IMG/VR virus record: IMGVR_UViG_3300028840_001395
Coordinates: 371,805-435,804 of that record
DNA length: 64,000 nt
Direction: 5' to 3' (one strand)
Position numbers and translations under genes: made by a program. The notes below the pieces were generated by a model that saw only the letters and a list, made by a program, of their open reading frames with translations, did not search any database and was not told where the DNA came from. Shown here piece after piece: positions 3,501 to 48,848 of this stretch (position 1 is its first letter; every line of letters starts with the position of its first letter).

Positions 3501-5935
3501 CTCAACTGAGCCCCGTTCATCGGGGCGTTCATCACATCCATCCGGTTGATGGAAGCGAAGAACATGCTCTTGGGGTCGTTGAAGTAGTTGGCCTCGAAGT
3601 CTCCAGGTCGCCAACCGAACTGGGCCACCAGGCGGTAGTCGATGTACTGACCCTGGACGCCCCACTCATTCTCCAGACCCGAGCCAAGGAAGTTCTTGAA
3701 CCCCGGCCCCTTGCCGGTCATGTAGGTGACCTGGGGCTCCTGTTCGTTGAAGTTGATGTTGATAATGTCGATGTCCTCGATGCGATAGACCCGTGCGCTC
3801 GACGTGTCGAGGTTGTACATGGGTGGCTTGAACACGAAGTCGCCATCCACGTCCTGGAAGAACTCGAAGCCCGTCACCTCACACACCCGCTGGGCGATGT
3901 CCATCTTGGACTCGTAGGTGGACTCGAAATCGTTGAAATTACCCCAGTTTCCAAGGTTGGTCACGAAAGCCTGCATCTCGATCATGTTCAACTCGAACTG
4001 GGGAGTGCTGGATGCCCCGGCCTCGGTATCCCGAGTCTGCCGCTGTTGGATGAGAGCTTCCAGGCGTCGGTTCCGAGTCAGCCCGAGTGCGATGGACTGC
4101 TGGAGGATCTCCGGCCTCACGCTCTGCTTCAGGTTGAACCGACCCCGGACGAGACTCGTGAGTTCCGTGCTGCTGGTCGAGCCCAGAAAAGCTGCCTGGG
4201 CGGCACTGTATAGCTCACCCGTGACCCCGTGCATCCGGAGCTTGGTCTCCTTGGTCTTGAATCGCTGCTCCCAGTACTTGATGTTCAAGGAGAACAGCGA
4301 ATCCGAGTTGACTGGCGAGCGGGCATCCTGGTTGGTCTTCTGTGAGAGCGCCCAGGAGACACCCGCCGCCGATCCCGCCACGTCATTGTGGAGGGTGTAG
4401 AGGATCTCGTAAGGGTGCATCCCCGTGTAGTTGTGGCCCACCACCGACGCCTTGAGCTTTGAGTTCAAGGGTCGAGCACCGAACAGCGAGGCATTGGTCG
4501 ATACCCGGTGATACTGCCAGAAGTGCAGCATCGAAGAACATGACACGGAGATGCTCTGAACACCTGTGCTGTAGGAGTGACCCACCTGGGTCACCACGCC
4601 TCTGAAAACGTGGTAGTAGGGGTAGGCCAGCACATCTTCAAGCCCGAAGCCCGCCAGACCCACCTCGTCCAGCAAGGACTGGTTGAAGGCCGGATCCACG
4701 ACATCCTCGTTCGGCTTCTGCTCGATGGGATCTCCGGGCAACGACTCGTTCACCACGGCCATCGGCTCCTGGCCGAGCTGCTGCTGGAGGTTCGGGATGC
4801 CCTCACCCACCGAGGGAATGAATCCGTCTCCGGCCCCTCTGTTCTCGAAGTAGCTGGCCACATCGCCGCGACCATTGTTCCGGAGCCATGCCAGAGCGGC
4901 CTTCGTGCCCGAAGTCCCCGGAGGCCCTATCTCATGCCCACCCCTGCCATCCGTGTTGACCCACAGCCAGGAAGCCGTGCTGCCCGGCTTTGTCCCTCGG
5001 GCATCGAACCCATAGGAGCCCCGGAAGTCGTAGTGCGTCCCGGAAGACCCGCCGGGAGGAGCGCCCTTCTTGCCCGTGGGAGCCCCCTGGTCAGAAGGAC
5101 TCGTGCCGTTGCAGGTAGCCCCATTGACATAGAGGCCCTGTCCGCCCTTGGGGAGACGACCCTGACGGGCCAACTCCTGCGTTCCGGCCCACGCCTGAAG
5201 GGCCGGCACCGTGCGACGGTTACCTGACGCATCGGTGTAATTGATGGTGTAGTCGATGGCCGCCCCGTCCGGATGTGACGAGCCCCCGCCCGGCCCGCGA
5301 TGGTGATCCGCGATGGACACCTCGGCGTTGGGGTATTGCTGCTGCCAGTACTTCTCGATGATTTCTGCCACTCCGGCAGCGATGACGGAGTTCTCCGCCT
5401 CGGGACCAGCCCCCAACTCGTCCATCCCACGACCGAGCCACTTGTTGAGGAGCCCCTCGGGCACATTGTTGAAGTTGACCCCAGACTTCGAGGCCGGGAA
5501 GCTGTCCTTCTTCTCCCCAATCTGTCGCTGGGCGATGATCTCCGGGGGCACCTCGCCTGCCGGGTTGATGCCTCCCTCGACGTTACGGGGGTCATCGAGG
5601 TTCGAGAAGAGACCCTTCACCGGGAAGTAACCCCGGAAGTAGATGTGGACTTCAAGCCCTGGGCGAAGGATGAAGCGAGCGTCACGGGCGAACGCCTCGT
5701 TGTGATGGACTGGCACTGACAGGGTGAAACTGGCCGACATCGCACCGGGGTCGGTGCCTGCATCAACGGAGACCTCGGTGATGAACTGCTGGATGTCGAT
5801 CTTGCCGTTGCACTTGGGGCAGCCGGGGATGGACACGTCCCCGTTGATGTACACCAGGGCATCAGGGGTGTGCTGCACCAACTCGTGCTGGCCGAGCCGC
5901 CAGCTTCCCACGTATGGTCTGTTCGTGATGCCCAT
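584..5935 (-). CDS. Baseplate hub protein (gp27/gpD-like) with inserted M15-type zinc peptidase domain
   Basis: 1783 aa. Hub-like segments (VFRGVVTQV, FEFFQDVDGDFVFKPP, PEIRPGYP, HSYGVGG..TTSLTL). Insert carries SSHPDGAAID...GLY...HYDFR. Position downstream of tape measure and initiators. Confidence 0.65.
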   Translation of the reverse strand: MGITNRPYVGSWRLGQHELVQHTPDALVYINGDVSIPGCPKCNGKIDIQQFITEVSVDAGTDPGAMSASFTLSVPVHHNEAFARDARFILRPGLEVHIYFRGYFPVKGLFSNLDDPRNVEGGINPAGEVPPEIIAQRQIGEKKDSFPASKSGVNFNNVPEGLLNKWLGRGMDELGAGPEAENSVIAAGVAEIIEKYWQQQYPNAEVSIADHHRGPGGGSSHPDGAAIDYTINYTDASGNRRTVPALQAWAGTQELARQGRLPKGGQGLYVNGATCNGTSPSDQGAPTGKKGAPPGGSSGTHYDFRGSYGFDARGTKPGSTASWLWVNTDGRGGHEIGPPGTSGTKAALAWLRNNGRGDVASYFENRGAGDGFIPSVGEGIPNLQQQLGQEPMAVVNESLPGDPIEQKPNEDVVDPAFNQSLLDEVGLAGFGLEDVLAYPYYHVFRGVVTQVGHSYSTGVQSISVSCSSMLHFWQYHRVSTNASLFGARPLNSKLKASVVGHNYTGMHPYEILYTLHNDVAGSAAGVSWALSQKTNQDARSPVNSDSLFSLNIKYWEQRFKTKETKLRMHGVTGELYSAAQAAFLGSTSSTELTSLVRGRFNLKQSVRPEILQQSIALGLTRNRRLEALIQQRQTRDTEAGASSTPQFELNMIEMQAFVTNLGNWGNFNDFESTYESKMDIAQRVCEVTGFEFFQDVDGDFVFKPPMYNLDTSSARVYRIEDIDIININFNEQEPQVTYMTGKGPGFKNFLGSGLENEWGVQGQYIDYRLVAQFGWRPGDFEANYFNDPKSMFFASINRMDVMNAPMNGAQLSIPMRPEIRPGYPFYIQYLDCFYYCPSFAHSYGVGGQATTSLTLQAKRAKFYAPGDPSRRGIDAIDLGDSILPPRPLQVLDNAGRPRLAGFPNVVMALDMKKLNPLFLIVGSDVDMIDNPDTLANLIRIAVDELHVIRPANIDDVTDRSEGTEGLYVLDIGERERQLLYFLNPFDEASNPQAGSPETPSGAVNLLAAAKTLVAAQDTQVEKLKAQQAKVNSLNQQIILLTQNVQRAQAQKYDSYEDYKKYILQKQQQISDLEKQRRELMAQYTQSQQDFETYLSNEDNVGIRWLIELIKRLGEAYGERYTSRGQGRSSKLKTTNNLLDILSNKKAAMIGGNIPGDFRYYSASHPDPKHQGQLEVSFQSPDAADQSPSTDTATTSTTKYRSPYLEGLWKNTTVEGFVPSDQVTQPVGSIRPEARLAPVTPKWGIRVLTNNPEQADGEILPTSEIRELMFATHSADISRRIISTQRRREVSDGEAQLREALQKSALTEVQQYQQGNTSQTLEDIFGSWLVNFNTNVNQSAEATKNTPGIDPSSIPVFPQLPVILSLTVGGTVFDFETPIGSSYRFSDVNSATTGLPEAWPGSSKNTTLRAFWERMAVELGTQAYRVMIAAAKYEWFDSMRSMGLPFTEAKYRLGLFEQSLGGHYDASMPTVEKAKQSTEAKRPFRLQTPVFPVSDARGYEVFGSYRYGRDVDIDPNGVFDALHNQSPLDILDKHQMDLILRVIVKKEGLYADVPVENPDGSVKTDKNGNPVTRKELLEGQDAYDEASRQVIAALRREYTDKQLLDLGLAEKTSDPNMLEINFMNWFSEKGKEGVQKLPINNAAYSLADMTLHTSKRICSCKMAEAEVMLDAAGQDNFLDFAAPANQTADTAGTGEEDRPTQWLMAEVARQSGAWKVSQDALRGTVPDTRKSTIVSTILSTGEAFRDQVDRISEQTRALTAQAESIEEEARRIRNDVEVVDDGEL

Positions 5936-36221: not shown

Positions 36222-37095
36222 ACGAAGACCATACCCGCCGGAAGACGCCCTGCCAACCCCGCTTGATGAGCTTCTTCTCGGACACCCGGAAGCGTGCCCA
36301 GTGCCGGGAGAACAGGCCATCGTCCGTCAGGAACAGGACAAGCTCCTCGACCACCTTCTCCACGTCACCCAGGTTCCGGCCCAGGGAGTGATACAGGTAG
36401 TCCAGCCCGCCCTGGGTCATGAGCGCCAGGAGGAACGCATTCTGGTTCACCTCGGCCCAGAAGTCTGGCAGGCCGGTCTTGATGGCCTTGAGCATCTCCA
36501 TCCAGATCTCCTGGGAGAGATAGAACACGTTCTCGTCCTCGTAGTCTGCCATCTCGCAGCCAGGGAACATGCCCTCCAAGGCCAGACCATTCATCTTCTT
36601 GTTGTGGCGCTTCCGGGTGAACTCGTCCTTGGCCCGCAGCGCGTCCTCGAAGGCCTGGGCGACCTCCTTCATGTTGTCCTGCTTCTGCTTGTAGCGAGGG
36701 TGTGCCTTCTCGATCTCCCGACGCTGGGACATGCACCCACCGCAGTCGTGGGCACACCCGTGAAGGGCATCCCATCGAGGACAGTCATCGGGAACGACTC
36801 TCTTCATCATTCCATCCGCGAGGATGGTCATCACCTTCTCATCGCAGGAGGCACAGGTATGAACCGTCGAAATGGAGCGAGTTTCGTCCTGACCCATCCG
36901 GGTCTCGTTCCAACGACTCTCCATGCAAGCGGTGAGGTGTTCACAATCCCGACAGGGGGCGAAGTCCTTTGCCCGATAGGACTCGATATTCTCGATACCC
37001 AGAATCTCCTCGACTGGCGGGCCGTTGTCGTCCGTAATGACCGCGTGATACCCGTCCTCGCACTTCACCCACAGCGTCTGCTCACTCAGACTCAT
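36205..37095 (-). CDS. Hypothetical Cys-rich protein
   Basis: 296 aa with multiple CxxC motifs, overlapping both neighbours. Confidence 0.7.
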   Translation of the reverse strand: MSLSEQTLWVKCEDGYHAVITDDNGPPVEEILGIENIESYRAKDFAPCRDCEHLTACMESRWNETRMGQDETRSISTVHTCASCDEKVMTILADGMMKRVVPDDCPRWDALHGCAHDCGGCMSQRREIEKAHPRYKQKQDNMKEVAQAFEDALRAKDEFTRKRHNKKMNGLALEGMFPGCEMADYEDENVFYLSQEIWMEMLKAIKTGLPDFWAEVNQNAFLLALMTQGGLDYLYHSLGRNLGDVEKVVEELVLFLTDDGLFSRHWARFRVSEKKLIKRGWQGVFRRVWSSYEAQV

Positions 37096-37777
37096 CAGCC
37101 TTGTCCCCCTCGGGAAGCCCCTTCTTCAGACGGGGATCCTGCGGCCCCTTGACGAACACGACCTCGACCCCGTGCTGTCGGAGGTAGTCCACACCGTTCC
37201 GACCCATGTAGCCTCCTCCCACGGCGAACACCTTGACGATGCCCGCATGGTGGATGAGCTTGGAGCACATGAGGCAGGGCTCACCCGTGACGAACAGCCA
37301 GGTTCCCTTGGTGGGAACACCATCGTGGGCGCAGTTGCAGATGATGTTCATCTCGGCGTGGACGCAACCCACCTCGACGTTCCCCCCAGAGGGGATGGGA
37401 GGATACTTGGCCAGGAGCAACTCACGGAAGGACTCGGCCTCGGCCTTGGGAAATCTCTTCCGCCCGCTGAAGTGGACGGCCTCGTCTCCCTTGGCCTCGA
37501 CGTAGAACTTGGGCTCCTCGGCGTCGGGTTCCTCATCGCCGTCGAACGCGACCTCCACATCGTCGGGGGTCAGACCGTCCCGGATGCAGTGATCTCCGCC
37601 ACAGAGGTCACCTCCTCCACGCGGGCCTCCATTGTATCCGTCCATGAGGATGGTGTTGCGGTCGGGGTTGATGAGCACGGCCCCGAACTTCCGGCGGGGA
37701 CAGTTCGATGCCTGGGCCAACGCGAGGCACTGCTTGACCCGGATTCTGAGATGCTTTTCTTTCACGGGAACCTCCAC
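37082..37777 (-). CDS. dCMP deaminase family protein with internal insertion
   Basis: S.C.RRKFGAV, GYNG, HAE.N and PCLMC zinc motifs. Confidence 0.85.
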   Translation of the reverse strand: MEVPVKEKHLRIRVKQCLALAQASNCPRRKFGAVLINPDRNTILMDGYNGGPRGGGDLCGGDHCIRDGLTPDDVEVAFDGDEEPDAEEPKFYVEAKGDEAVHFSGRKRFPKAEAESFRELLLAKYPPIPSGGNVEVGCVHAEMNIICNCAHDGVPTKGTWLFVTGEPCLMCSKLIHHAGIVKVFAVGGGYMGRNGVDYLRQHGVEVVFVKGPQDPRLKKGLPEGDKADESE

Positions 37778-37858: not shown

Positions 37859-37887
37859 TTGACAGGTCTGACGGCCTCCTGTAGAGT
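37859..37887 (+). promoter_or_regulatory. Sigma70-type promoter of the small RNA array
   Basis: TTGACA-N17-TAGAGT. Predicted start about 37894, at the 5' arm of RNA1. Confidence 0.7.
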
Positions 37888-37895
37888 GACCCATC

Positions 37896-38027
37896 GTGAG
37901 CACGAGAACTGTCGTGCCGGTTCAGTGACATGGCGCAGTTGGAAGCGCATCTGCCTTCAAGCAGAGTGTCGTAGGTTCAAGTCCTACTATCACTACCTTC
38001 TTCCGACACGCGACCTACTCGGCTCAC
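37896..38027 (+). ncRNA. Y-RNA-like RNA1: end-paired stem enclosing a complete tRNA cloverleaf
   Basis: GTGAGC/GCTCAC, CGAG/CTCG, GTCG/CGAC and CGG/CCG pairings flank the tRNA at 37924-37995. Carries the shared motif CGAGAACT-N9-GTTCAG. Confidence 0.65.
37924..37995 (+). tRNA. tRNA-like element with 6-nt anticodon loop (CTTCAA), no encoded CCA
   Basis: Acceptor AGTGACA/TATCACT (one mismatch), D arm GCGC-AGTTGGAA-GCGC, anticodon stem TCTGC/GCAGA, T arm GTAGG-TTCAAGT-CCTAC. Confidence 0.75.
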
Positions 38028-38029
38028 AA

Positions 38030-38111
38030 ACCCAACGGGAACTTGAGGGTTGGTTCAGGAAGGCTTCCACAAGGCCATGACAACCCCCGACGCTCTCCTT
38101 GCCCGTTGGTT
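38030..38111 (+). ncRNA. Y-RNA-like RNA2
   Basis: CCAACGGG/CCCGTTGG, GGGTTG/CAACCC and TCA/TGA stems. Motif CGGGAACT-N9-GTTCAG ... CCTTGCCCG. Confidence 0.6.
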
Positions 38112-38120
38112 CCCCAGCTA

Positions 38121-38150
38121 GGCTTACTCAGCCCAACCATAGAGTAGTCA
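38121..38150 (+). promoter_or_regulatory. Phage promoter motif GGCTTAC-N14-GAGTAGTCA
   Basis: Copy of the six-member motif upstream of RNA3 and the TROVE-like gene. Confidence 0.7.
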
Positions 38151-38151
38151 T

Positions 38152-38218
38152 TAGCTGCGGGGACTGTGCCGCCAGTTCAGCTTGGCAACGCTTCTGACGG
38201 CCATCCTGCCCGCAGCTA
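38152..38218 (+). ncRNA. Y-RNA-like RNA3
   Basis: TAGCTGCGGG/CCCGCAGCTA, GCCG/CGGC and CAG/CTG stems. Motif CGGGGACT-N9-GTTCAG ... CCTGCCCG. Confidence 0.6.
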
Positions 38219-38258
38219 TCATCCCCCAGGGGAGGGGGATTCGACCTGGAGGTGTCCC

Positions 38259-39866
38259 ATGACGAGCATGACCATCACGACCGCCGATGAGCTGACCCTG
38301 TGGCAGCCTCGGAGCGGAATCGCTCCCGCACAGGCGGGATCCGCCGTGTGCTCGTTCCTCGACACCGCGACCACGAGCATGGGTCGGGCGACCCACTACA
38401 ACACCCGGCAGGAGCAGCAGGACGCGGAGCTTGCCGCTCACGCGATGCTGCTGGATCTGAGCCGTGATCTGTACACCGTCCTCCTGGCGCTGCCGGGCGT
38501 GACCGACCGTTCGGTCCAGGTCGGAATGAAGAAGCTGCTCTCCACGCACCGGAACGGCACCAGCGACGAGTTCCTGACCCCGGCGATGGAGAGGGCCGTC
38601 CTCTACCACCTCATCCAGGCGCTTCCGGTGCCCAGGATGATGCGCTTGATGGACGCCTTCCGCTTCGGGAACCCGGAGCTTGGCGTCAGCCGGGCGAACA
38701 ACGCTCGGACGCGGAAGCTCATCCTGCGGACACTGCTCGGGTCTCCGCGCCTGCCCCTGTGGTCGGTCAAGTACCGCTCCAAGATGGCGTCGGCACTGAC
38801 CCACGCCTGGGGCAAGAGGATGGCCTCCATCCTGCGGGAGATCCTGCGGAAGGATGGTCGTCGGCTGACGGCCAAGGACAAGGCGATCCTGGGCCAGAAC
38901 CTCGACAAGTACTGCGAGGCGAAGCCGAAGCAGGCCCGTGAGTGCGTGGCCTTCATCCTGGGTGTCCGGTCGCGCCTGAGCGTCCCGCTGCTCAAGGCCT
39001 TCGAGGCTGCCAAGACCGACCTGTCCAAGGGGACGAAGCTGCCGTTGGAGGTTCTGGAGGGCATCCGCTCGACGTACCACGCGGACGTGAGCAAGGACGA
39101 GGTGCTCAAGCTGGTCGCCCGTGGCGGCAAGATGACTGACCACCAGAAGAAGGCCGTCCAGAAGCGGGCCAAGGCAGCGGATGTCGAGGTCAAGATGGAT
39201 CCGACCCGCTACGAGGCCGTCGAGCTGTATCTCTACGCCTTCGAGATGGGCCTCGATGAGTCCATCACCAAGGCCCTGGAAGAGAAGGCGGTCAAGGCCG
39301 CGTCGGCGTTCCCGGCTCGCTACGGAGACGTGGGCATCGTCGTGGACGCCTCGGCCTCGATGAAGGGCCACCAGACCCAGGCGCTGCGCCCGATGGCGGC
39401 GACCCTGGCCATGCGGGACATGCTCCAGCACGTCGGGGAGCGCCAGTCCACGCACTACGTGGGTGGGCAGATGGGCGACCTGGTGCGTCCGATGGGCGAC
39501 ACGGCCCTGGCGGACGGTCTGGTCGAGGCTCTGGAGGCCAGCCCGGACGTGGTGTTCGTGCTGTCTGATGGATACGAGAACGCTCCGGCAGGCCGCTTCT
39601 CGGAGGTCATGGAGCAGGTGCGGGAGATCGGCATCGAGACCCCGGTGTACCACCTGAACCCGGTCTTCGCAGCGGAGCGCACGGGTGTCCGGGAGCTTGC
39701 TCCCAGCTTCGTGCCGACCATGCCGGTCAAGTCCCCCACGGGACTCGGTACGACCATGCTCAGGGGCCTCATCGAGGCAGAGCCGGTCAAGGGCATCAAC
39801 TCCCTCGTGAGGATGGCCCTGATGAGCGGCCCGGTCGAGATGAAGTTCCTGGCCGAAGGAAAGTGA
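38259..39866 (+). CDS. Divergent Ro60/TROVE-like helical domain + vWA protein
   Basis: SD GGAGGTG before ATG 38259. Basic all-helical N-terminal ~360 aa, then vWA with DASASM and VFVLSDGYEN (Ro60-type architecture). vWA is secure; TROVE is inferred. Confidence 0.6.
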   Translation: MTSMTITTADELTLWQPRSGIAPAQAGSAVCSFLDTATTSMGRATHYNTRQEQQDAELAAHAMLLDLSRDLYTVLLALPGVTDRSVQVGMKKLLSTHRNGTSDEFLTPAMERAVLYHLIQALPVPRMMRLMDAFRFGNPELGVSRANNARTRKLILRTLLGSPRLPLWSVKYRSKMASALTHAWGKRMASILREILRKDGRRLTAKDKAILGQNLDKYCEAKPKQARECVAFILGVRSRLSVPLLKAFEAAKTDLSKGTKLPLEVLEGIRSTYHADVSKDEVLKLVARGGKMTDHQKKAVQKRAKAADVEVKMDPTRYEAVELYLYAFEMGLDESITKALEEKAVKAASAFPARYGDVGIVVDASASMKGHQTQALRPMAATLAMRDMLQHVGERQSTHYVGGQMGDLVRPMGDTALADGLVEALEASPDVVFVLSDGYENAPAGRFSEVMEQVREIGIETPVYHLNPVFAAERTGVRELAPSFVPTMPVKSPTGLGTTMLRGLIEAEPVKGINSLVRMALMSGPVEMKFLAEGK

Positions 39867-39876
39867 GAGGTGTGCT

Positions 39877-40869
39877 ATGCCGCGTAGGAACCAGGCGACA
39901 CTGACGGTCGAGGAGATCCTTCAGGGGACTCGCCTCGGGCGTACTCAGTCGGTCGGCCACATGGAGGTCATCCCGATCTTGGACGACGGGGACGCGGCGG
40001 ACGACACGTTCGCACCCCCATACTTCTCGGCGGGAACCCAGAACTACGGGAGCGTCCGTGTTCAGAACATGGATCCAGACCGTCCGACCATCGTTCCCAC
40101 GGGCTCGGGGTTCGTCACGAGTCAGCGGGCGCAGGATCACGCGACTTCGGGCGCGAAGTTCCTCAAGCCGGGCGAGAACAAGACCATCGAGGGTGCCATG
40201 TGCATCCAGGAGACTCAGGGTGGCCTCATCCGGCAGGAAGAGGACACGATGCTGGTGGTTCTCCCGGCATCGATGCGGGCGTCCATCCTCGCCATGCGGA
40301 ACGACGGGGACTACTCTCGGGCGTGGCCCTACATCCGGGAGTTCAACGCGAGCGTGGGCGTCCCCGGTGCGGGTGACCTCGTGAACTTCCTGCGGGAGTA
40401 CGACCGTCAGCTTGACGAGTTCGTGGCCGAGTTCGAGCTTCTGCCGAACCAGATCGGGGCCATCGTCCTGGTCGGGGGCCGGGTCGTGGGTGTCGAGCGT
40501 GCCCCGAACGTGCCCTTCTGGGAGAAGCTCTGGGTGCCGCTCGTCCGTGTCTGCTACGGCTCGCTGGCCTTGCGGACGGCCCGTGTGCTGGGTGACCAGC
40601 CGCCTGCGACGCGGACGGCGCTCACGGTACAGGACAAGTCGCTCGCTGGCATCAAGCAGGCCCTTCGGGACGCTCGCGTCAAGGCCGAGGGTCTGATCGA
40701 GGCCGCATACAACGAGGTTCGCTCGACGCCCCTGCTCTACGCAGAGGGTGCCGAGGGAAAGCTCGGCGGTGCGGAACTGTTCACGGTCGCCAACACCCGG
40801 TTGGCTGGCCAGATGGTTCGCCGTGGGGCGCTCGCGTCCTACGTGTCCCTCTGCGCCCCAGGGCTCTGA
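39877..40869 (+). CDS. ARPP/DUF6569-like domain protein
   Basis: 330 aa. MEVIPI, YGSVRV.N, AQDHA, CIQETQGG and FELLPNQIGAIVLVGG...GVE match recalled ARPP-family motifs. Confidence 0.6.
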   Translation: MPRRNQATLTVEEILQGTRLGRTQSVGHMEVIPILDDGDAADDTFAPPYFSAGTQNYGSVRVQNMDPDRPTIVPTGSGFVTSQRAQDHATSGAKFLKPGENKTIEGAMCIQETQGGLIRQEEDTMLVVLPASMRASILAMRNDGDYSRAWPYIREFNASVGVPGAGDLVNFLREYDRQLDEFVAEFELLPNQIGAIVLVGGRVVGVERAPNVPFWEKLWVPLVRVCYGSLALRTARVLGDQPPATRTALTVQDKSLAGIKQALRDARVKAEGLIEAAYNEVRSTPLLYAEGAEGKLGGAELFTVANTRLAGQMVRRGALASYVSLCAPGL

Positions 40870-40875
40870 GGGACT

Positions 40876-40925
40876 GGCTTCGGGGCCGGGACGGGACACT
40901 CCCGGTGCCCGAGGCCGCGTTCTTT
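40876..40925 (+). terminator. Terminator-like hairpin after the ARPP gene
   Basis: GGCTTCGGG-GCCGGGA/TCCCGGT-G-CCCGAGGCC followed by TTCTTT. Confidence 0.5.
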
Positions 40926-40935
40926 GAGAACTTCG

Positions 40936-40965
40936 GGCTTACTTCCCGCCCTGTGGGAGTAGTCT
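40936..40965 (+). promoter_or_regulatory. Phage promoter motif GGCTTAC-N14-GAGTAGTCT
   Basis: Copy of the six-member motif just upstream of the tRNA-like pair. Confidence 0.7.
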
Positions 40966-40982
40966 AGGAGAGGAGAACACGT

Positions 40983-41059
40983 CGGAGTGTACCTCAGTGG
41001 TAGAGGGCCTGGCTCTTGGGACCGGGCTGACATAGGTTCGAGCCCTATCACTCCGACCA
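40983..41059 (+). tRNA. tRNA-Pro-like gene with 9-nt anticodon loop (CTCTTGGGA), CCA encoded
   Basis: Acceptor CGGAGTG/CACTCCG + ACCA (Pro-type C1-G72, A73), D arm CCTC/GAGG, anticodon stem CCTGG/CCGGG, T arm ATAGG-TTCGAGC-CCTAT. Confidence 0.8.
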
Positions 41060-41071
41060 CATACGATGAGT

Positions 41072-41145
41072 TGCGGCGTAGCTCAGTGGTAGAGGGCCTG
41101 GCTCTTGGGACCGGGCTGACATAGGTTCGAGCCCTGCCGTCGTAA
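41072..41145 (+). tRNA. Chimeric tRNA-like gene: different acceptor stem, same 54-nt core with 9-nt loop
   Basis: Acceptor TGCGGCG/CGTCGTA. 41082-41135 is identical to 40993-41046. Mismatches at D and T stem junctions. No CCA. Confidence 0.65.
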
Positions 41146-41164
41146 CGCGATTCGGAGGCCCCAG

Positions 41165-42541
41165 ATGACCGACTTGGAGAAGCTGTATCAGTCCATCAAG
41201 GAGCGGTGGCGTCCGGAGGACGTGGCACAGGTCATCTACAACTCCCACGGTCGGCACATGAGCCCGTCCATGAAGCGGAACCTCGCGCGGGCTTCGGGGC
41301 GGGGTGAGGGCTACTCCTCGATGTCCCGCAAGTTCGCGGGAGCGAGCGGCCTGTCCAAGCAGATCGCCATCGCGGAGGTGCTGTTCCCGGACGTGCCGGT
41401 TCCGGTCAACCTGGGGGACGAGGACACCGTCTGGGACTACATCGAGCGTCTGGACGAGGCGCTGTGCAAGAGCGGTGAGAAGTCGGGTGACGACTTCGCG
41501 AACGACCGCCGGAACCGGCGTGGCCGGGCCGTCAAGGGTGTCCCGTGGCGCGGCCACCGGGCCTACAACAAGCGGTTCCGTCTCGTGACCCGCATGAAGG
41601 CCAAGTTCGGTCGCTGGGGCCGGAACAAGGAGCTGCGCGAGATGGCGCAGATCGCCAAGTCCCGGCTCGCCTGCCGCCTGTCCTGGGAGGAGTTCTCCCG
41701 TGACGGCAACACGGCCTGCTTCATCGCCTACATGACGGCCCGGCTGAACCTGCGTTCGGTGTTCACCTGCGGCAAGCAGGATCGGGCCTACGACAGCATC
41801 GCGGACATGCTGTTCAAGCGGCTGCGTCCGGGCCGGGCGAACTGGTACGCCGTGGCGCACGTCCACGTTCTGCCGGAGGTCACCAACCGCCTGACGGACG
41901 AGGAGAAGGGCAAGCTCATCGGTGTCTGGTTCGGCCAGATGAAGCGGTGCTGCGTCTACCTGGACGAGCTTCAGCAGACGCAGGACGTGGATCTCACCGG
42001 GTTGGTGGTTCACCGGGGCAACGACTCCTCGACCTGGAACGATGTCGCCGGGGCCTACAACAAGTGCCGGGACGGCTGGATCTCGACGCTCTACGCGATG
42101 GGCAAGGAGGCCCTGCTGGACAAGTTCGCTCCGCCGAAGATGCTGCGCCTGATGGCCGCTGACGTGGTCGCCTGGCACCGGAGCACCAACGGCCTGGAGC
42201 CGGACACCCTCGTCTGGAACGACCTGCCGAAGCCGTGGGAGGTTGTCCTGGGCCGGGAGTCCTGCACCCGGAAGGATATCGAGCGGGCCTGCCAGCGCCG
42301 GGGCATCAAGGGCAAGGGCTGGATCACCCCGCGAGCCAAGAAGGTCGCCCCGTTCAAGCCCACCCCGGAGCTTGTCCACGGCGTCGTAGTGGCTTCGCCG
42401 GAGCTTGCCGCCGTGCTCAAGAAGTGCGGCTACTTCTCCGGTCCGTCCAAGGGCGTCAAGGGCATCGCGGACGTGCCGATCTCCAAGCAGCAGGAGGGCG
42501 ACGTGACGGTCGTCCGCGACGCTCTGGAGCAGACCGCCTGA
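41165..42541 (+). CDS. Hypothetical basic helical protein (RPEDVA family) of the TROVE/ARPP locus
   Basis: SD GGAGG. 458 aa with strong coding bias. R/K/W-rich (YNKRFR, GNDSSTWN, LRLMAADV..WH, PTPELVHGV). Confidence 0.8.
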   Translation: MTDLEKLYQSIKERWRPEDVAQVIYNSHGRHMSPSMKRNLARASGRGEGYSSMSRKFAGASGLSKQIAIAEVLFPDVPVPVNLGDEDTVWDYIERLDEALCKSGEKSGDDFANDRRNRRGRAVKGVPWRGHRAYNKRFRLVTRMKAKFGRWGRNKELREMAQIAKSRLACRLSWEEFSRDGNTACFIAYMTARLNLRSVFTCGKQDRAYDSIADMLFKRLRPGRANWYAVAHVHVLPEVTNRLTDEEKGKLIGVWFGQMKRCCVYLDELQQTQDVDLTGLVVHRGNDSSTWNDVAGAYNKCRDGWISTLYAMGKEALLDKFAPPKMLRLMAADVVAWHRSTNGLEPDTLVWNDLPKPWEVVLGRESCTRKDIERACQRRGIKGKGWITPRAKKVAPFKPTPELVHGVVVASPELAAVLKKCGYFSGPSKGVKGIADVPISKQQEGDVTVVRDALEQTA

Positions 42542-42612: not shown

Positions 42613-42720
42613 ATGGGGAGCCGTAAAAGGAATCGGAAGCGCCGCTTGAAGCGGAAAGCCCGTCAGGCAGAGAAGAAATCCCAGAAGAAGGAGAAGCCCG
42701 CCAAGGAAGGCAGCAACTAG
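42613..42720 (+). CDS. 35-aa highly basic peptide
   Basis: MGSRKRNRKRRLKRKARQAEKKSQKKEKPAKEGSN*. Purine-rich SD GGAGAGGAGAGG and own promoter motif. Below the ORF track cut-off. Confidence 0.55.
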   Translation: MGSRKRNRKRRLKRKARQAEKKSQKKEKPAKEGSN

Positions 42721-44942
42721 CTGCGAGGACGGCCTCCGGGCCAGCGCTTCTCCTCGTAGTCCTTGTCGCCTCGGGTCTTGGGCTTGGTCTGACCGCCAGG
42801 GCCACCCTTCGTGGTGACGTAGCAGCGGTCGGCCTCATCGCCGGTCTCGTAGTAGCACTTGCCTTTGGCCTCGGGAGTCCAGTTGCCCGGCCCTCGAACG
42901 TCGGGGCCGGTCATCCCGTAACCCTTGCCGGGCTCGCCCTTCCACAGACGGCCAGCCATCTGCTCGTCACCACATCCTGCTGCCGTGCGGCGCAAGATGG
43001 GGATGAGGTGCTTCCGCATCTCGGGGACATCGTGAGCGAGCTTCATCACAGCGTTCCGCAGTGGCGTCGGCTGAGCCGTGGCCGTCTTGCCTCCCTCTCC
43101 GCCTTCTTCCTCATCCATGATCGACTTGAACATGATCATGAAGTCCGCGACGCTCATGCCCTTCATCCGTTCCTTGGTCTCGGGCTTCGCCTCACGCATG
43201 AACTTCTGCATGAGCTGAGCATCGGTCATCTTCTTGTAGTTCTTGAGCTTCTTCTTGAACTTGCCGACCTCCTTCTCATCATCGTCGGTGAGGTCGAGTT
43301 CCTTCTTCACGTCGGCCACGGAACGCTTGGGCTTCTCACCCTCGTCCTTCTTGCCCTTGGTCTTGTCCTCACGCTTCTGCTTCTTGCGCTCAGCAGTCTG
43401 CTCGGGAGTCTCCTTATCGGCTCGGGTCTGGGCCTTGGCCCACTCCATCTTCGTCTCGGTGGGGTTGATGGAACCACCCTCCTCGAAGTAGAGCTTGGAC
43501 TGAGAGCCGAAGTTCCAGCCGTCCTTGACCTTCTTGGTGACCTTCTTGCCACTCTTGGGATCCTTGAAGGTGACGACATCACCAATGCCGACATCCTCCC
43601 AGTTCTTGATGGGAGAACCCGGATTCCGCTTCTGCTTCTTCTGCCTACCGAGCGGACGCTTCTCCCCCGACTCGTACTCCTCCTTCTCCTCCCGATGCTT
43701 CTTCTGCTTCTTCTGCTTCCTCCGAAGCCGCTTCTGCATGTCCTCGGGGAGGCTCTTGAAGTTCACCTTGTTCCCGGTGTCCGGGTGGGTGAACTTCTGC
43801 TCCTCAAGCTCGAATGCCCGCTTGAGCAGAGGAACGAGATACTTCCGAAGCTCGGGCATGTCATGGGCGAGCTTGATTGTGGCCCGCCGAAGAGAGGCCA
43901 GGCGACCGTCCTCGTAGTCATTCTCGTGCTGCTGACCAGCCGCGAGCCAGAAGGTGTACTCGTTGAGGTCGTCCTCATCCATCTCCTCGACGCGCTCCTC
44001 CTCGATACCCGCTTCCGTGAGGTACTGCCGGGCCTCGTCCGCCGGGACGTTCCAGCCAAGCTCCTTGACCCAGTGCTTCACGGCCTCGTCGGCACTGCCG
44101 GGCTGGGACACGTCCTCTGCGGCTTCGTTCGGGAACCGCACCCCGACCCAGCCGTCGAAGCCGTTGAAGTCCTTGGGGTCGAAGTCCTTCTTGAACGACT
44201 CGGTGGACACGTCGTACTCGTCGTCATCGTCTCCGCCGCCGTCGTCCTTCTTCTCGTCGTCGGAGTCGTCTGGCTTCTTCTCGTCCTCGGGCTTCTTGCC
44301 CTCGTCCTTGGGCTTCTCGTCGTCCTTGGGGGCCTCGTAGAAGTCCTTGGGGGTCTTCTCGGTGTTGGGGTGCTTCTCCTTGTACTCCTTGTAGAGCTTC
44401 TCCGCACCCTCCTCGGTCTTGGCCTTGTCGCCCGCCCACCGGGCGGCGAAACCCTCCGGGAGCGGCTTCTTGACACCGTAGTCCTCGGGGGTGAGTTCAC
44501 CATCCCGGACCTGCTGCTCGAATTCTCGGGCGAAGTGCGCCGCCACGGCTTCACGATGCTTCTTCGGGAACATGAGCGGCCACTTCGAGTAGTGGAACGG
44601 CTCCCCGTCCCGGCTGGAGTTGCCGTTCATGTCCCAGTTCATGTAGCCATCAGTACTCTTGTAGAGCGCCTTGGCCCCGGTCTCGACGGCATACATCCAG
44701 AGCTTGACGGCCAGACGAGGGTCGTATTTGCCGTTGACGATCTTCCGCATGAGGTTCTTGCGGATGGACTCCATCTGTCGATAGACGAAGGAATCGTTGT
44801 CCATCCACATGACGAGATCATCCCCGTACCCCGGCAGGTTGAGGCGAGATGCTTGCCGGGTCCGACGCAGGATGGGGATGAGATGCTTCCGAAGCTCAGG
44901 GTTCTCTTGAGCCAGCTTGATCGTGGCTTCACGCAGGGTCAT
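42717..44942 (-). CDS. Multidomain charged protein with three LRxAxxKLAxxxPExRKxLxPxL repeats (putative internal head polyprotein)
   Basis: 741 aa. Three copies of a ~24-aa motif separating unrelated domains. Late promoter motif upstream. Confidence 0.75.
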   Translation of the reverse strand: MTLREATIKLAQENPELRKHLIPILRRTRQASRLNLPGYGDDLVMWMDNDSFVYRQMESIRKNLMRKIVNGKYDPRLAVKLWMYAVETGAKALYKSTDGYMNWDMNGNSSRDGEPFHYSKWPLMFPKKHREAVAAHFAREFEQQVRDGELTPEDYGVKKPLPEGFAARWAGDKAKTEEGAEKLYKEYKEKHPNTEKTPKDFYEAPKDDEKPKDEGKKPEDEKKPDDSDDEKKDDGGGDDDDEYDVSTESFKKDFDPKDFNGFDGWVGVRFPNEAAEDVSQPGSADEAVKHWVKELGWNVPADEARQYLTEAGIEEERVEEMDEDDLNEYTFWLAAGQQHENDYEDGRLASLRRATIKLAHDMPELRKYLVPLLKRAFELEEQKFTHPDTGNKVNFKSLPEDMQKRLRRKQKKQKKHREEKEEYESGEKRPLGRQKKQKRNPGSPIKNWEDVGIGDVVTFKDPKSGKKVTKKVKDGWNFGSQSKLYFEEGGSINPTETKMEWAKAQTRADKETPEQTAERKKQKREDKTKGKKDEGEKPKRSVADVKKELDLTDDDEKEVGKFKKKLKNYKKMTDAQLMQKFMREAKPETKERMKGMSVADFMIMFKSIMDEEEGGEGGKTATAQPTPLRNAVMKLAHDVPEMRKHLIPILRRTAAGCGDEQMAGRLWKGEPGKGYGMTGPDVRGPGNWTPEAKGKCYYETGDEADRCYVTTKGGPGGQTKPKTRGDKDYEEKRWPGGRPRS

Positions 44943-46576: not shown

Positions 46577-47896
46577 CTACCCCACGAAACTCAAGATACG
46601 TCTCTCAACCTCTTGTGGATCAGATTTCACTTCTGACTCCCACACCACAAGACACTCTATCCCAATCTCCTTGAAAGCTGCAACAAGCTCCGACTCGTGA
46701 TCGAAAGGGGCCTTCCCAGTGAACATCCGGGAGTGCCAGAAGTTCCCGAAGACCTCCACGACCCTAGTGACACCCTTGAAAGGCTTCTTCGGGTCGAGGC
46801 CAGGGACGATGAAGTCCGGATTCTTGTACTGGCCCAACAAGGAGAGCCACTTCCAGAATTGACCGTCTCCCGTGAACATCATGCGGTCGCACATCGCAGC
46901 TACCCGACCTTCGAGAAGGTTTGGGCCTCTGGTGCAAAGGCCTGGGAATGGAGTGCCGTATCTCTGGATATTCGTCTGCCGTTGCTTCTCCCTGAACCCC
47001 TCAAGTTGAAGTGGGTGGTCAACCCCATACCGCTCCCGGAACACCTCCACGAGCCTGTCCCAGTGACCTTCAATAGCCCCAGGAAACTCCACCCCGAACC
47101 GCTCCTTGAGGGCCTCCCTGACGATCCTCTTTCCCTCCTCTGACGCGAAGAAATGACTCCCCCAGTTGGCCTCCATCGTCTCCAACTGTTTGCGCCTGAT
47201 CTCCGGGTCCAGGCACGTCCAGGGGACCCCATACCGCTCTTGGTTGGTCTTCTGCGCCTTGCCCCTTACTTCAGGAGAGCAGGAAGGAGACGGACCACCA
47301 TACCGATCCTCACAGGTGGCCCTGATCTGTTCTCTGCGCTCGGGCAGTGATAGGAGTTCCTCAGCCCCGTAGACCTCCAGATTCGTGGCCCTCGTAGATG
47401 CTCGTATCTCGGGCACCTGCTGAGGGTTGCCCACGCCATGTTCTCGCCGCCAATGCTCTCGTATCTTCTCCTTGACCTCGGGCTTGGCGAAAGGATTGTC
47501 CTGACCCCTCAAGACAGGGCGCTTCCCTTCCAAAGACGCCTGCACCTTCGCAAACGTCGAGGCTCCCCGACTGAATGGATTCTCGGCCCCGTATCTCTCC
47601 CGATTCGTAGCCGCCCTCTTGGCATCCGCCTCCGGTGTCCTCCGAGCATCCTCTACCCCGTATCTCGCCAGACTCGTGGACTTCCTCCGAGCATTGGCCA
47701 CAGCCTTCCTGTCCCGACTCTGCCAGACTTCACACGTCCGGCGGTGGCGCTTCATCTGGGTCAGACTCGTGGCCTCATGGCCACAGAGGCACGGGGGAAC
47801 CTTGGGAGAGGATTGCGGATGACACTTGGAAAGATGACGGGCGTTGAGCTTGTCGCCCTTGAACTCTCGATTACAGTAGGGGCAGGTTACTGACAT
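46577..47896 (-). mobile_element. Putative homing endonuclease: Zn fingers + ERYGV repeats + Vsr/PD-(D/E)XK domain
   Basis: CPYC..H..C and CLCG..H..C motifs. Roughly ten (TN)xERYGx repeats. C-terminal PDFIV...VEVFGNFWH...G..CLVVWESE. Atypical codon usage. Confidence 0.75.
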
Positions 47897-48848
47897 GCTC
47901 CATAACATAGCTCAGAAGATTGCCAAATGTCAAGAGGATGGGAATGACCACAAAATTCCTCGGGCTCAAGACACCCCGGCCCACGTAAGGGCCAAAGGCC
48001 GACCGGACTCCGCGACCGAAGCGTGGCTGCTGCAGGCCCTTGATGTACTTGACCGTCCGGGCCTTGGCCTCGGTCGCCTTGTCGAACTGGCTCTCGGCGT
48101 TCTGCTTGAGGCTCTCGTACTTGCTGGACTTCTCCAGGTTGAGGCTCACGCCACCGATGCTGTAGTCAAACTCGTCTGCGACCCAGTTGGCCGACAGGGC
48201 GAAGGTGGCGTGGGTGATGGCGTCCCAGAGGATTGCGGTGCGCCAGCAGGAGTACTCGTTGCAGAGCTTGTTGATGTTGTTCAGCGTCCCGCAGGTGTTC
48301 GGCGGGAACATGTTCCACCAGTCCATCGCCCGCTCGATGTACTCCAGCAGCTCCTCGTCCTCCCAGATCTGGCCGAAGATGCGGTTGTACTGGCCGATGT
48401 CCCCCTCATACTCCGGGGGCCGGAAGTGGTAGAACTTGTCGGGATTCTGGTCACGTAGCAGCATCCGCAGGCTGTGGATGAGTTCCTGCTCGCACTGGGT
48501 GTACGGCGAAGACCCGGTGCTCTGACAGGCGGACACGATGGCGAACTCCTGCACAACCATCTGGAGCGGCGAGTTGGCGTTCTCTCTGAAGTACCACCGG
48601 ATGCGATAGGTGCCCGCACAGGCTGTGCCTGGCACCATCAGAGAGGCGTAGTACTCGCCCACCTGGGGGTTGACCGGAGTGCGATGGTCGGAGCCGATGA
48701 GGACTTCCTGCTCCGGAGGGCCGGGATCCACGTAGTAGAGGGCGTAGTAGATCTCGGCGGCGTTCGAGGGGTGTCCGTGGCAGTTCTGGAGGAAGATATC
48801 CAGGTCGCCCCGCCCCAACGTCTGTCCTGGTGTGAAGGCGATGCCCAT
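47871..48848 (-). CDS. Putative head-tail adaptor/connector protein
   Basis: Ig-like N-terminus, then LRMLLRD...IWEDEELLEYIE..., YSIGGVSL..EKS.KY helical adaptor pattern. Confidence 0.55.
   Translation of the reverse strand: MGIAFTPGQTLGRGDLDIFLQNCHGHPSNAAEIYYALYYVDPGPPEQEVLIGSDHRTPVNPQVGEYYASLMVPGTACAGTYRIRWYFRENANSPLQMVVQEFAIVSACQSTGSSPYTQCEQELIHSLRMLLRDQNPDKFYHFRPPEYEGDIGQYNRIFGQIWEDEELLEYIERAMDWWNMFPPNTCGTLNNINKLCNEYSCWRTAILWDAITHATFALSANWVADEFDYSIGGVSLNLEKSSKYESLKQNAESQFDKATEAKARTVKYIKGLQQPRFGRGVRSAFGPYVGRGVLSPRNFVVIPILLTFGNLLSYVMEHVSNLPLL

What the first reader, a model, noticed from the sequence alone, without database searches (positions are those of the whole stretch)
37859..42541. 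Candidate phage Ro/Y-RNA-like ribonucleoprotein system: small RNA array + TROVE-like vWA + ARPP + tRNA mimics + unknown protein
Seen: a co-oriented island inside a virion gene region, with three promoters, containing three related end-paired RNAs, a helical+vWA protein, an ARPP-like protein, two tRNA-like genes and a 458-aa basic helical protein. All three cloverleaves have non-canonical anticodon loops (6, 9, 9 nt). Established: Ro60/Rsr (TROVE+vWA) proteins bind adjacently encoded Y RNAs, often tRNA-like, and are linked to RNA decay and repair. Inference: the three proteins and the RNAs form one system that repairs, protects or decoys RNA during infection, for example against host anticodon nucleases or RNA ADP-ribosylation. 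No RtcB ligase is seen in the window, so the effector may be new.
Basis: partly seen in the sequence, partly recalled or inferred. Interest (0 to 1): 0.92.

Follow-up and report, generated by a model that had tools for sequence, protein, structure and literature searches.

The report
Ro-like protein, new RNA, ARPP enzyme
A huge phage carries a previously undescribed relative of the Ro60/Y-RNA particle: a Ro-shaped protein, its own conserved structured RNAs with tRNA-like inserts, and an always-adjacent ARPP enzyme; the same trio sits inside tRNA gene arrays of myxobacteria and planctomycetes, next to a second, separate pair made of an unknown protein and tRNA-like RNAs with oversized anticodon loops.

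Summary
The island 37859-42541 (+ strand) contains three related end-paired RNAs, a helical+vWA protein (A), an ARPP protein (B), two tRNA-like genes and a 458-aa orphan (C).

It is two modules, not one. Module 1 is the RNA array plus A plus ARPP.
- A is followed by ARPP in 74 of 74 untruncated related loci.
- A covariance model of the RNA gives 104 hits, all on A's strand and almost all just upstream of A. Fifteen of 16 base pairs show compensatory changes.
- A's AlphaFold model matches only Ro60 structures in the PDB over its full length, but with TM 0.31-0.45. No TROVE signal is detectable by sequence.
- In bacteria the module sits inside arrays of up to 54 tRNA genes, sometimes beside a canonical Ro60.

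Module 2 is C plus its own tRNA-like family.
- The family has an invariant CUCU and an anticodon loop of 7, 8 or 9 nt.
- It occurs without A/ARPP in other huge phages and in Gemmata.

Best reading: a Ro/Y-RNA-like ribonucleoprotein with ARPP as effector, acting on tRNA. RNA binding and the enzyme's chemistry are inferred. I found no published description.

The parts
37859..37887 (+). Sigma-70-like promoter (TTGACA-17-TAGAGT) ahead of the RNA array
   Evidence: 10 of 12 consensus positions. The region holds 2 such sites against 0.2 expected. Conserved in L085.
37900..38024 (+). RNA unit 1: P1 / AACU loop / P2 / UUCAG, enclosing a full cloverleaf (37924-37997) with a 6-nt anticodon loop
   Evidence: R2 34.0 bits, E 1.5e-4. 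Rfam tRNA 57 bits. The end helices covary with L002. The loop is 7 nt in L089 and 6 nt here.
38033..38109 (+). RNA unit 2 (hairpin insert, no tRNA-like module)
   Evidence: R1 56.5 bits and R2 53.9 bits. Seed member of alignment A5.
38121..38147 (+). Recurrent phage promoter-like motif GGCTTA-N15-GAGTAG
   Evidence: 6 copies in the window, all on the + strand, 0.03 expected.
38152..38218 (+). RNA unit 3, about 40 nt upstream of A's start codon
   Evidence: R1 57.7 bits and R2 54.4 bits at 38155-38216. 10-nt perfect inverted repeat 38152-38161 / 38209-38218.
38259..39866 (+). Protein A, 535 aa: Ro60-like helical repeat domain plus C-terminal vWA with intact MIDAS
   Evidence: AF2 pLDDT 85.1, pTM 0.77. 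Foldseek PDB top 10 are all Ro60, E 6e-6 to 3e-4, TM 0.31-0.45. Invariant DxSxS..T..D. 677 family representatives. The ATG start with GGAGGTG upstream is conserved.
39877..40869 (+). Protein B, 330 aa: ARPP
   Evidence: Pfam PF20208 E 1.4e-18 and PF22549 E 1.8e-6. H88 and C109 invariant, Q86/Q111/Q114 at least 90% conserved in 64 sequences. Directly downstream of A in 74 of 74 untruncated loci.
40936..40962 (+). Second copy of the GGCTTA-N15-GAGTAG motif, ahead of module 2
   Evidence: Conserved in L085 and L002.
40983..41059 (+). tRNA-like RNA t2: perfect cloverleaf, encoded CCA, 9-nt loop CUCUUGGGA
   Evidence: Member of the C-linked family A8, whose anticodon stem is 100% paired.
41072..41146 (+). 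tRNA-like RNA t3: same 54-nt core as t2, different acceptor stem, no CCA, weakened T stem
41165..42541 (+). Protein C, 458 aa: orphan, mostly helical protein paired with the CUCU tRNA-like family
   Evidence: AF2 pLDDT 88.4, pTM 0.86. No PDB fold match. Only two uncharacterised giant-virus proteins match in BFVD. 963 homologs. tRNA-like neighbours in nearly all C loci.

Best explanation
The island holds two separate RNA-protein modules.

Module 1, 37859-40869:
- It is a distant analogue, and probably a remote homologue, of the Ro60/Y-RNA particle.
- Protein A is a Ro-shaped helical ring closed by a vWA/MIDAS domain.
- A binds the RNAs encoded just upstream. The likely platform is helix P1, an AACU/CCU internal loop, helix P2 and a UWCAG junction.
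- The variable distal part of the RNA is a hairpin or a whole tRNA-like cloverleaf. It either presents a tRNA shape to tRNA-handling factors or mimics a tRNA.
- ARPP, with invariant Cys and His, is the catalytic partner that the particle brings to its RNA substrate.
- In bacteria the module lies inside tRNA gene arrays, so the substrate is most likely tRNA: surveillance, end or ribose clean-up, or protection of the tRNA pool.
- In the phage it would keep translation running when host nucleases or modifying enzymes attack tRNA.

Module 2, 40936-42541:
- It is protein C plus two tRNA-like RNAs of a family that always accompanies C.
- C probably binds or processes these RNAs at the invariant GG-CUCU anticodon arm.

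Shown: the gene and RNA linkage, the RNA structure, the fold resemblance and the conserved catalytic residues. Inferred: RNA binding by A and by C, the substrate, and the chemistry.
For: A-ARPP linkage: the order A then ARPP is kept in 74 of 74 untruncated loci, down to 30% identity. These come from Myxococcota, Planctomycetota, a few other phyla and about 25 huge-phage contigs.

RNA structure:
- On 15 seed units, 86% of cells pair against 38-51% when the partner is slid, and 14 of 17 pairs have compensatory changes.
- On 42 units, 81% pair against 33-53%, and 15 of 16 pairs are compensatory.

RNA specificity:
- 104 R2 hits in 1.41 Mb are all on A's strand and lie in 51 sources.
- They sit mostly within 600 nt upstream of A, and downstream of ARPP in L072 and L078.
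- There are none in the C-only loci tested with R2 (L005, L007, L008) and none beside the canonical Ro60 of L001.

Fold: A's confident model matches only Ro60/TROVE structures at E below 1e-3, over its full length. The vWA domain starts at the same place, about residue 355. MIDAS is intact.

tRNA link:
- 21 of 42 bacterial loci carry at least 5 tRNA genes within 10 kb, up to 54.
- 28 RNA units enclose an ARAGORN-detectable cloverleaf.

ARPP: invariant C109 and H88 fit the conserved Cys/Gln centre described in PMC9503650.

Module 2:
- The cloverleaf is 98.6% paired, CUCU is invariant and the loop is 7-9 nt.
- The family lies next to C in nearly all C loci and is absent from about 70 A/ARPP loci without C.
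Against: - No sequence method links A's helical domain to TROVE. Pfam finds nothing, the profile search against PDB finds nothing, and hhalign gives 38.6% over the vWA part only.
- TM-scores to Ro60 are below 0.5, so ring closure is not shown.
- The RNA lacks the Ro-binding motifs GNCGAAN0-1G and GGUCCGA and hits no Rfam Y-RNA model.
- The tRNA-like module is joined to the stem through its acceptor end, unlike the topology I recall for YrlA.
- About a third of A loci gave no RNA hit with default filters.
- No ligase, kinase or nuclease recurs next to the module. Only an HNH (11 of 68 loci) and Ro60 (8 in the clustering; 9 by tblastn) do.
- ARPP has no assayed activity.
- The window itself has no tRNA array.
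Confidence: 0.5

Rival explanations
1. The RNA units are cis-regulatory leaders. A binds its own 5' UTR to autoregulate the A-ARPP operon, as ribosomal-protein leaders do. There is no stable trans-acting RNP, and A and ARPP work on something other than these RNAs.
For: The proximal unit ends 40-130 nt before A's start codon in most loci, and all units are on A's strand. In the window, unit 3 lies between a promoter-like motif and A's ribosome-binding site.
Against: There are 2-5 tandem units per locus. Many carry whole cloverleaves, which a leader does not need. In L072 and L078 the units lie downstream of ARPP. A separate sigma-70-like promoter precedes units 1-2.
Confidence: 0.15
2. The module is a bait or decoy device. 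The embedded tRNA-like cloverleaves, with their fast-changing anticodon loops, imitate the targets of anticodon nucleases or tRNA-modifying toxins. A holds the bait, and ARPP reverses or senses the damage.
For: Orthologous 116-nt units of Pirellulales genera are about 92% identical, with invariant flanks and D/T arms. Yet the anticodon triplet reads AUG, UAG, CUU, AUU or UUU. In the window clade the unit-1 loop is 7 nt in L089 and 6 nt in the window. ARPP elsewhere belongs to predicted conflict systems (PMC9503650).
Against: Many units have no tRNA-like part at all. Loop variation may simply reflect the lack of any constraint. No PADLOC model is hit. The bacterial loci are flanked by housekeeping genes.
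Confidence: 0.2
3. A is a generic vWA scaffold or co-chaperone unrelated to RNA. Its proximity to RNAs only reflects insertion of a mobile two-gene cassette into tRNA arrays.
For: Weak VWA_CoxE hit. HNH genes occur in the arrays. TM-scores to Ro60 are modest.
Against: The RNA family tracks A itself, including in loci without any tRNA array such as Yinghuangia L039 and L042, and the window. No MoxR-type ATPase is adjacent. Every significant PDB fold match is Ro60.
Confidence: 0.08

Closest known systems
Ro60 (Rsr) with Y RNAs (YrlA/YrlB, Yrn1), including the rsr-yrlBA-rtcBA operon and phage Ro60 (Thermus phage phiLo)
   Same: - Helical-repeat domain followed by a vWA/MIDAS domain of the same size and order.
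- Best and only significant structural matches.
- Partner ncRNAs encoded next to the gene, about 65-140 nt long.
- The RNAs have a long stem formed by the 5' and 3' ends, plus a variable module that often mimics tRNA (PMC4201824).
- Found in bacteria and in large phages (PMC7824862).
   Different: - No TROVE or vWA_Ro60 Pfam match, although 25%-identical Ro60s in the same loci do match.
- A different conserved RNA motif: AACU/CCU loop plus UWCAG.
- The tRNA-like module is attached through its acceptor end and keeps an anticodon arm.
- The fixed protein partner is ARPP, not RtcB, RtcA or PNPase.
- It co-exists with a canonical Ro60 in 9 loci, each with its own RNA type.
ARPP in ARG/rhodanese-phosphatase-centred ADP-ribose systems (Iyer, Burroughs, Anantharaman, Aravind 2022; PMC9503650)
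   Same: Same Pfam family. Conserved Cys and Gln residues.
   Different: That paper lists ARG/R-P, HIRAN, WYL and deacetylase contexts. A Ro-like vWA partner, a dedicated ncRNA and tRNA arrays are not among them. No ARG or phosphatase gene is adjacent here.
tRNA array units of bacteria, plasmids and phages (PMC4758250, PMC5966550, PMC12803027)
   Same: In Myxococcota and Planctomycetota the module lies inside arrays of 13-54 co-oriented tRNA genes covering all amino acids.
   Different: The window has only three tRNA-like genes, none canonical. The papers retrieved do not mention a Ro-like or ARPP gene pair in arrays.
Phage tRNAs with altered anticodon loops that escape anticodon nucleases, and frameshift-suppressor tRNAs with 8-nt loops (from my own knowledge, not tested here)
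   Same: tRNA-shaped RNAs of a phage with non-standard anticodon loops.
   Different: The loop length varies from 7 to 9 nt within one family that has an invariant CUCU prefix. The family is tied to one orphan protein, C. It also occurs in the Gemmata chromosome.

Membership tests
Ro60 / TROVE protein family | TROVE domain detectable by sequence (Pfam PF05731) | tested here: not met
   No hit for A. No TROVE hit is precomputed for any of the 120 listed homologs: 118 have no Pfam hit at all and 2 have only VWA_CoxE PF05762. A profile of 38 sequences finds no Ro60 among PDB sequences. hhalign against 8 Ro60s aligns only the vWA part, probability 38.6%. Control: 25%-identical Ro60s from the same loci pass Pfam.
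Ro60 / TROVE protein family | Fold: alpha-helical repeat toroid closed by a C-terminal vWA domain with MIDAS | tested here: inconclusive
   The top 10 Foldseek PDB hits are all Ro60, probability 1.0, 557-599 aligned columns, but TM 0.31-0.45 and rmsd 11-14 A. MIDAS DxSxS, T and D are invariant.
Ro60 / TROVE protein family | Adjacent ncRNA with an end-paired stem and a tRNA-like or looped module | tested here: met
Ro60 / TROVE protein family | Physical binding of the ncRNA and of misfolded RNA ends | not testable with these tools
   Needs pull-down, EMSA or an experimental structure.
Y RNA / YrlA | Match to the Rfam Y-RNA models, or presence of the 5' motif GNCGAAN0-1G (vertebrate GGUCCGA) | tested here: not met
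   Rfam gathering and E-value scans give only tRNA hits. The conserved motif here is AACU ... UWCAG. Motif definition taken from PMC4201824.
ARPP (PF20208 / PF22549) | Pfam match above the curated cutoff, plus conserved Cys and Gln | tested here: met
   67.7 bits against a cutoff of 27. C109 and H88 invariant, Q86/Q111/Q114 at least 90% conserved.
Decoding tRNA | Cloverleaf with a 7-nt anticodon loop, U33 and a purine at position 37 | tested here: not met
   The cloverleaf is met. The loops are 6, 9 and 9 nt in the window. The unit-1 loop is not conserved among close relatives.
tRNA array unit (at least 20 tRNA genes at 2 or more per kb) | tRNA gene number and density | tested here: not met
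   The window has 3 tRNA-like genes in 64 kb. The criterion is met in relatives, for example L009 (54 tRNAs), L001 (48) and L061 (37).
Known anti-phage defence systems (PADLOC-DB) | Match to any PADLOC protein model | tested here: not met
   No hit for A, B or C.

The most novel reading that the evidence does not exclude
There are two undescribed tRNA-centred RNPs.

(1) A third lineage of Ro-type particles.
- Its RNA carries a swappable tRNA-like bait.
- Its effector, ARPP, is a new RNA-acting enzyme using a covalent Cys mechanism on ribose, 2'-phosphate or ADP-ribose lesions.
- It serves as the dedicated guardian of tRNA gene arrays in large-genome bacteria and has been captured by huge phages.

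(2) Protein C is a new-fold enzyme that acts on tRNAs whose anticodon loops are built 1-2 nt too long. For example, such tRNAs could become functional only after processing, or could resist wobble-excising nucleases.
Probability: 0.25. Interest if true: 0.93.

Novelty: new variant of a known kind. Interest (0 to 1): 0.85.

Why it matters
Ro60/Y-RNA particles are the model for how a non-coding RNA adapts a ring-shaped RNA-surveillance protein to different effectors. Bacterial examples have so far been found by sequence similarity to TROVE.

- A Ro-shaped family that is invisible to sequence searches suggests this design principle is broader than the TROVE family. This one has its own covariation-supported RNA and a fixed partner enzyme of unknown chemistry.
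- The link gives ARPP a concrete, testable nucleic-acid context.
- Its placement inside tRNA arrays offers a functional handle on those arrays, whose role is still debated.
- It also points to a tRNA maintenance or counter-defence function in huge phages.
- The second module pairs an orphan protein with tRNA-like RNAs whose loops are 7-9 nt long. It is a separate, equally untouched lead in tRNA biology.

Tried and rejected
- Nucleotide search of the island against GenBank phages: no match. By protein, A occurs only in the uncultured 462-kb phage LR756500.1 and C in no record.
- Sequence-level homology of A to Ro60 was tried in four ways: phmmer against PDB, a profile against PDB, and hhalign against one Ro60 and against eight. 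Only the vWA part aligns weakly.
- C as a core member of the system: rejected, because it is absent from about 70 A/ARPP loci.
- C as a paralogue of the 445-aa gene next to it in Gemmata: rejected by BLASTP. That neighbour gives only weak, sub-threshold TPR hits.
- Fold assignment of C: no PDB match. BFVD gives only two uncharacterised giant-virus proteins.
- Other recurrent partner genes: ORF clustering over 68 loci found only an HNH and Ro60.
- Known ribozyme, riboswitch or Y-RNA identity of the units: none in Rfam 15.
- A first DNA search pattern for the CUCU family had a wrong spacer and found nothing. It was redone in Python.
- The first regex for the RNA motif was too strict and then too loose. 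Only the covariance-model results are used for counts.
- 'Virion gene region': PHROG and Pfam scans of about 25 neighbouring ORFs gave almost nothing.
Full report
**1. What is in the window**

The island is a + strand block between two - strand genes: a dCMP deaminase (37082-37777) and a 741-aa ORF (42717-44942). The window is 100% identical to IMG/VR contig UViG_3300028840_001395, which is 435.8 kb long. It has about 62% G+C. Almost none of its large ORFs has a Pfam or PHROG hit.

- ARAGORN and Rfam both find three cloverleaves, at 37924-37997, 40983-41059 and 41072-41146.
- Protein A (38259-39866) shows only a sub-threshold VWA_CoxE hit.
- Protein B (39877-40869) is ARPP-1, E 1.4e-18.
- Protein C (41165-42541) hits nothing.

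**2. A and ARPP form an invariant pair**

A has 462 homologs at 90% clustering and 677 representatives at 50%. All are unannotated.

I fetched 46 loci from GTDB species genomes and 30 from viral contigs. The genome loci are mainly Myxococcota and Planctomycetota. A few come from Actinomycetota, Bacteroidota, Gemmatimonadota, Gammaproteobacteria and Desulfobacterota. I also fetched close relatives of the window.

tblastn shows ARPP directly downstream of A, on the same strand, in every locus that is not cut off, down to 30% identity. In 64 ARPP sequences H88 and C109 are invariant, and Q86, Q111 and Q114 are nearly so. This matches the conserved Cys/Gln centre described for ARPP in PMC9503650. 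That paper does not list this gene context.

ORF clustering found no third recurrent protein. Only an HNH endonuclease (11 of 68 loci) and canonical Ro60 recur.

**3. C is not part of that pair**

C accompanies A/ARPP only in the window's close kin: L002-L004, L085, L087 and L089. Elsewhere it stands alone, in the Gemmata obscuriglobus chromosome and in other huge-phage contigs.

**4. The small RNAs are a real, conserved family**

The region upstream of A holds three units that share a motif. They are conserved in relatives whose A is 69-93% identical.

Each unit reads, from 5' to 3':
- helix P1;
- (G)AACU;
- helix P2;
- UWCAG;
- a variable insert;
- the return strand of P2;
- (C)CU(N);
- the return strand of P1.

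| Alignment | Cells paired | Paired when partner is slid | Pairs with compensatory change | Covariation score (slid) |
|---|---|---|---|---|
| 15 short units | 86% | 38-51% | 14 of 17 | 0.67 (0.14-0.24) |
| 42 model-aligned units | 81% | 33-53% | 15 of 16 | 0.61 (0.07-0.26) |

Model R2 finds 104 hits at E up to 0.1 in 1.41 Mb.
- All are on A's strand, in 51 sources.
- Nearly all lie within about 600 nt upstream of A. In L072 and L078 they lie downstream of ARPP.
- There are none in the C-only loci tested with R2 (L005, L007, L008).
- There are none beside the canonical Ro60 of L001.
- In the window there are exactly three, the units listed in section 1 of the parts.

Rfam has no matching family.

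**5. The insert is often a whole tRNA-like cloverleaf**

Of the regex-defined units, 28 enclose an ARAGORN tRNA and 45 carry a T-loop motif.

In Pirellulales the orthologous 116-nt unit is about 92% identical across genera, with invariant flanks and D/T arms. Its anticodon triplet nevertheless differs: AUG, UAG, CUU, AUU or UUU. In the window clade the same loop is 7 nt in L089 and 6 nt in the window. These cloverleaves therefore do not behave like decoding tRNAs.

**6. A is Ro-like by structure only**

The AlphaFold model is confident (pLDDT 85.1, pTM 0.77). It has about 20 helices, then a vWA fold from about residue 355, then terminal helices.

- Foldseek against the PDB returns Ro60 structures as all ten matches below E 1e-3. 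They are frog and human Ro60, Thermus phage phiLo Ro60 and a TROVE domain entry.
- These matches align over 557-599 columns at probability 1.0.
- TM-scores are only 0.31-0.45. The next hits are unrelated Rossmann-like proteins.
- MIDAS residues are invariant.

No sequence method sees TROVE. Ro60s that are only 25% identical to the Minicystis Ro60, from the same loci, do pass Pfam. I therefore call A Ro-like, not a member of the TROVE family.

**7. Genomic setting in bacteria**

In the Minicystis MAG and in M. rosea, A/ARPP lie inside an array of 48-54 co-oriented tRNA genes that covers all amino acids. A canonical Ro60 and an HNH gene lie in the same array.

- 21 of 42 bacterial loci carry at least 5 tRNA genes within 10 kb.
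- Nine loci have a Pfam-positive Ro60 within about 5 kb.
- The Ro60 of L001 has its own long tRNA-model hits at 5268-5515. The R2 units lie only next to A.

**8. Module 2**

The tRNA-like genes beside C form one family.
- The cloverleaf is 98.6% paired.
- All seven acceptor pairs covary.
- The 5-bp anticodon stem is 100% paired.
- The loop always begins with CUCU.
- The loop is 7 nt in Gemmata and L008, 8 nt in many phages, and 9 nt in the window, L002, L085, L087, L094 and L101.

A pattern for this arm is found next to C in nearly all C loci. It is essentially absent from the A/ARPP loci without C, despite their 600 or more tRNAs.

C's model is confident (pLDDT 88.4). It has no PDB counterpart, and only two uncharacterised giant-virus relatives in BFVD.

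In the window, t2 and t3 share an identical 54-nt core but have different acceptor stems. Only t2 encodes CCA.

**9. Transcription signals**

One sigma-70-like site precedes unit 1. The other two 'promoters' are copies of GGCTTA-N15-GAGTAG. This motif occurs six times on the + strand, each time ahead of a + strand gene or RNA, against 0.03 expected.

**10. Interpretation**

The best-supported reading is a Ro/Y-RNA-like particle with ARPP as its fixed effector, working on tRNA. C and its RNAs form an independent neighbour. Rival readings are a cis-regulatory leader, a bait or decoy device, and a generic vWA scaffold. They are weighed in their own sections.

Searches of the paper library found Ro60 in jumbo phages (PMC7824862), bacterial Y RNAs (PMC4201824), ARPP (PMC9503650) and tRNA arrays. 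They found no description of this protein family, this RNA or their linkage. This absence is limited to the papers held in that library.

Noticed in passing
window 19322, 33612, 35361, 38121, 40936, 42550 (+ strand): A 27-nt motif, GGCTTA-N15-GAGTAG, occurs six times, always on the + strand and ahead of + strand genes or RNAs (expected 0.03). It is probably a phage-specific promoter class distinct from the sigma-70-like site at 37859.
   Followed up: partly
window 42613-42720 (+): A 35-codon ORF for an extremely basic peptide, rich in Lys and Arg. It follows C and has its own copy of the promoter-like motif and a purine-rich ribosome-binding site. It overlaps the end of the convergent 741-aa ORF.
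   Followed up: no
L001:5268-5515 (Minicystis MAG), just downstream of the canonical Ro60 at 3493-5139: Two tRNA-model hits of 119 and 124 nt, with a long insertion in the anticodon arm. They are likely Y-RNA-like partners of the canonical Ro60, and they differ from the RNA family next to protein A.
   Followed up: partly
L001:12450-12962, L038:4635-5177 and 9 other loci: An HNH endonuclease gene recurs inside the tRNA arrays that hold A/ARPP (11 of 68 loci).
   Followed up: partly
BFVD entries A0A3G4ZSE3 (Edafosvirus) and A0A5K0U9D9 (Yasminevirus): The only structural relatives of protein C are uncharacterised proteins of giant viruses of amoebae (E 3e-12 and 2e-10, TM 0.5-0.6).
   Followed up: no
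L062:9738-9864, L075:9244-9510, L100:6979-7052: Some embedded or neighbouring tRNA-like genes carry stop-reading anticodons: UUA, UCA and CUA. This hints at suppressor tRNAs or stop-codon recoding in some of these huge phages.
   Followed up: no
window 37082-37777 (-); L085:1716-2399; L089:77-574; L002:15757-16239: A dCMP deaminase gene recurs near the module in the window's relatives. It lies immediately upstream and divergent in the window and L085, further upstream in L089, and about 6 kb downstream in L002.
   Followed up: no
L002:12451-12942; L008:5943-6848 and 784-1182: NAD/ADP-ribose-related genes lie close to C in some phages: CinA/PncC-like, ADP-ribosylglycohydrolase and Nudix. The association was not quantified.
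   Followed up: no
window 46577-47908 (-): A DUF7487 / homing-endonuclease-like gene (PHROG 3339), 4 kb downstream of the island.
   Followed up: no
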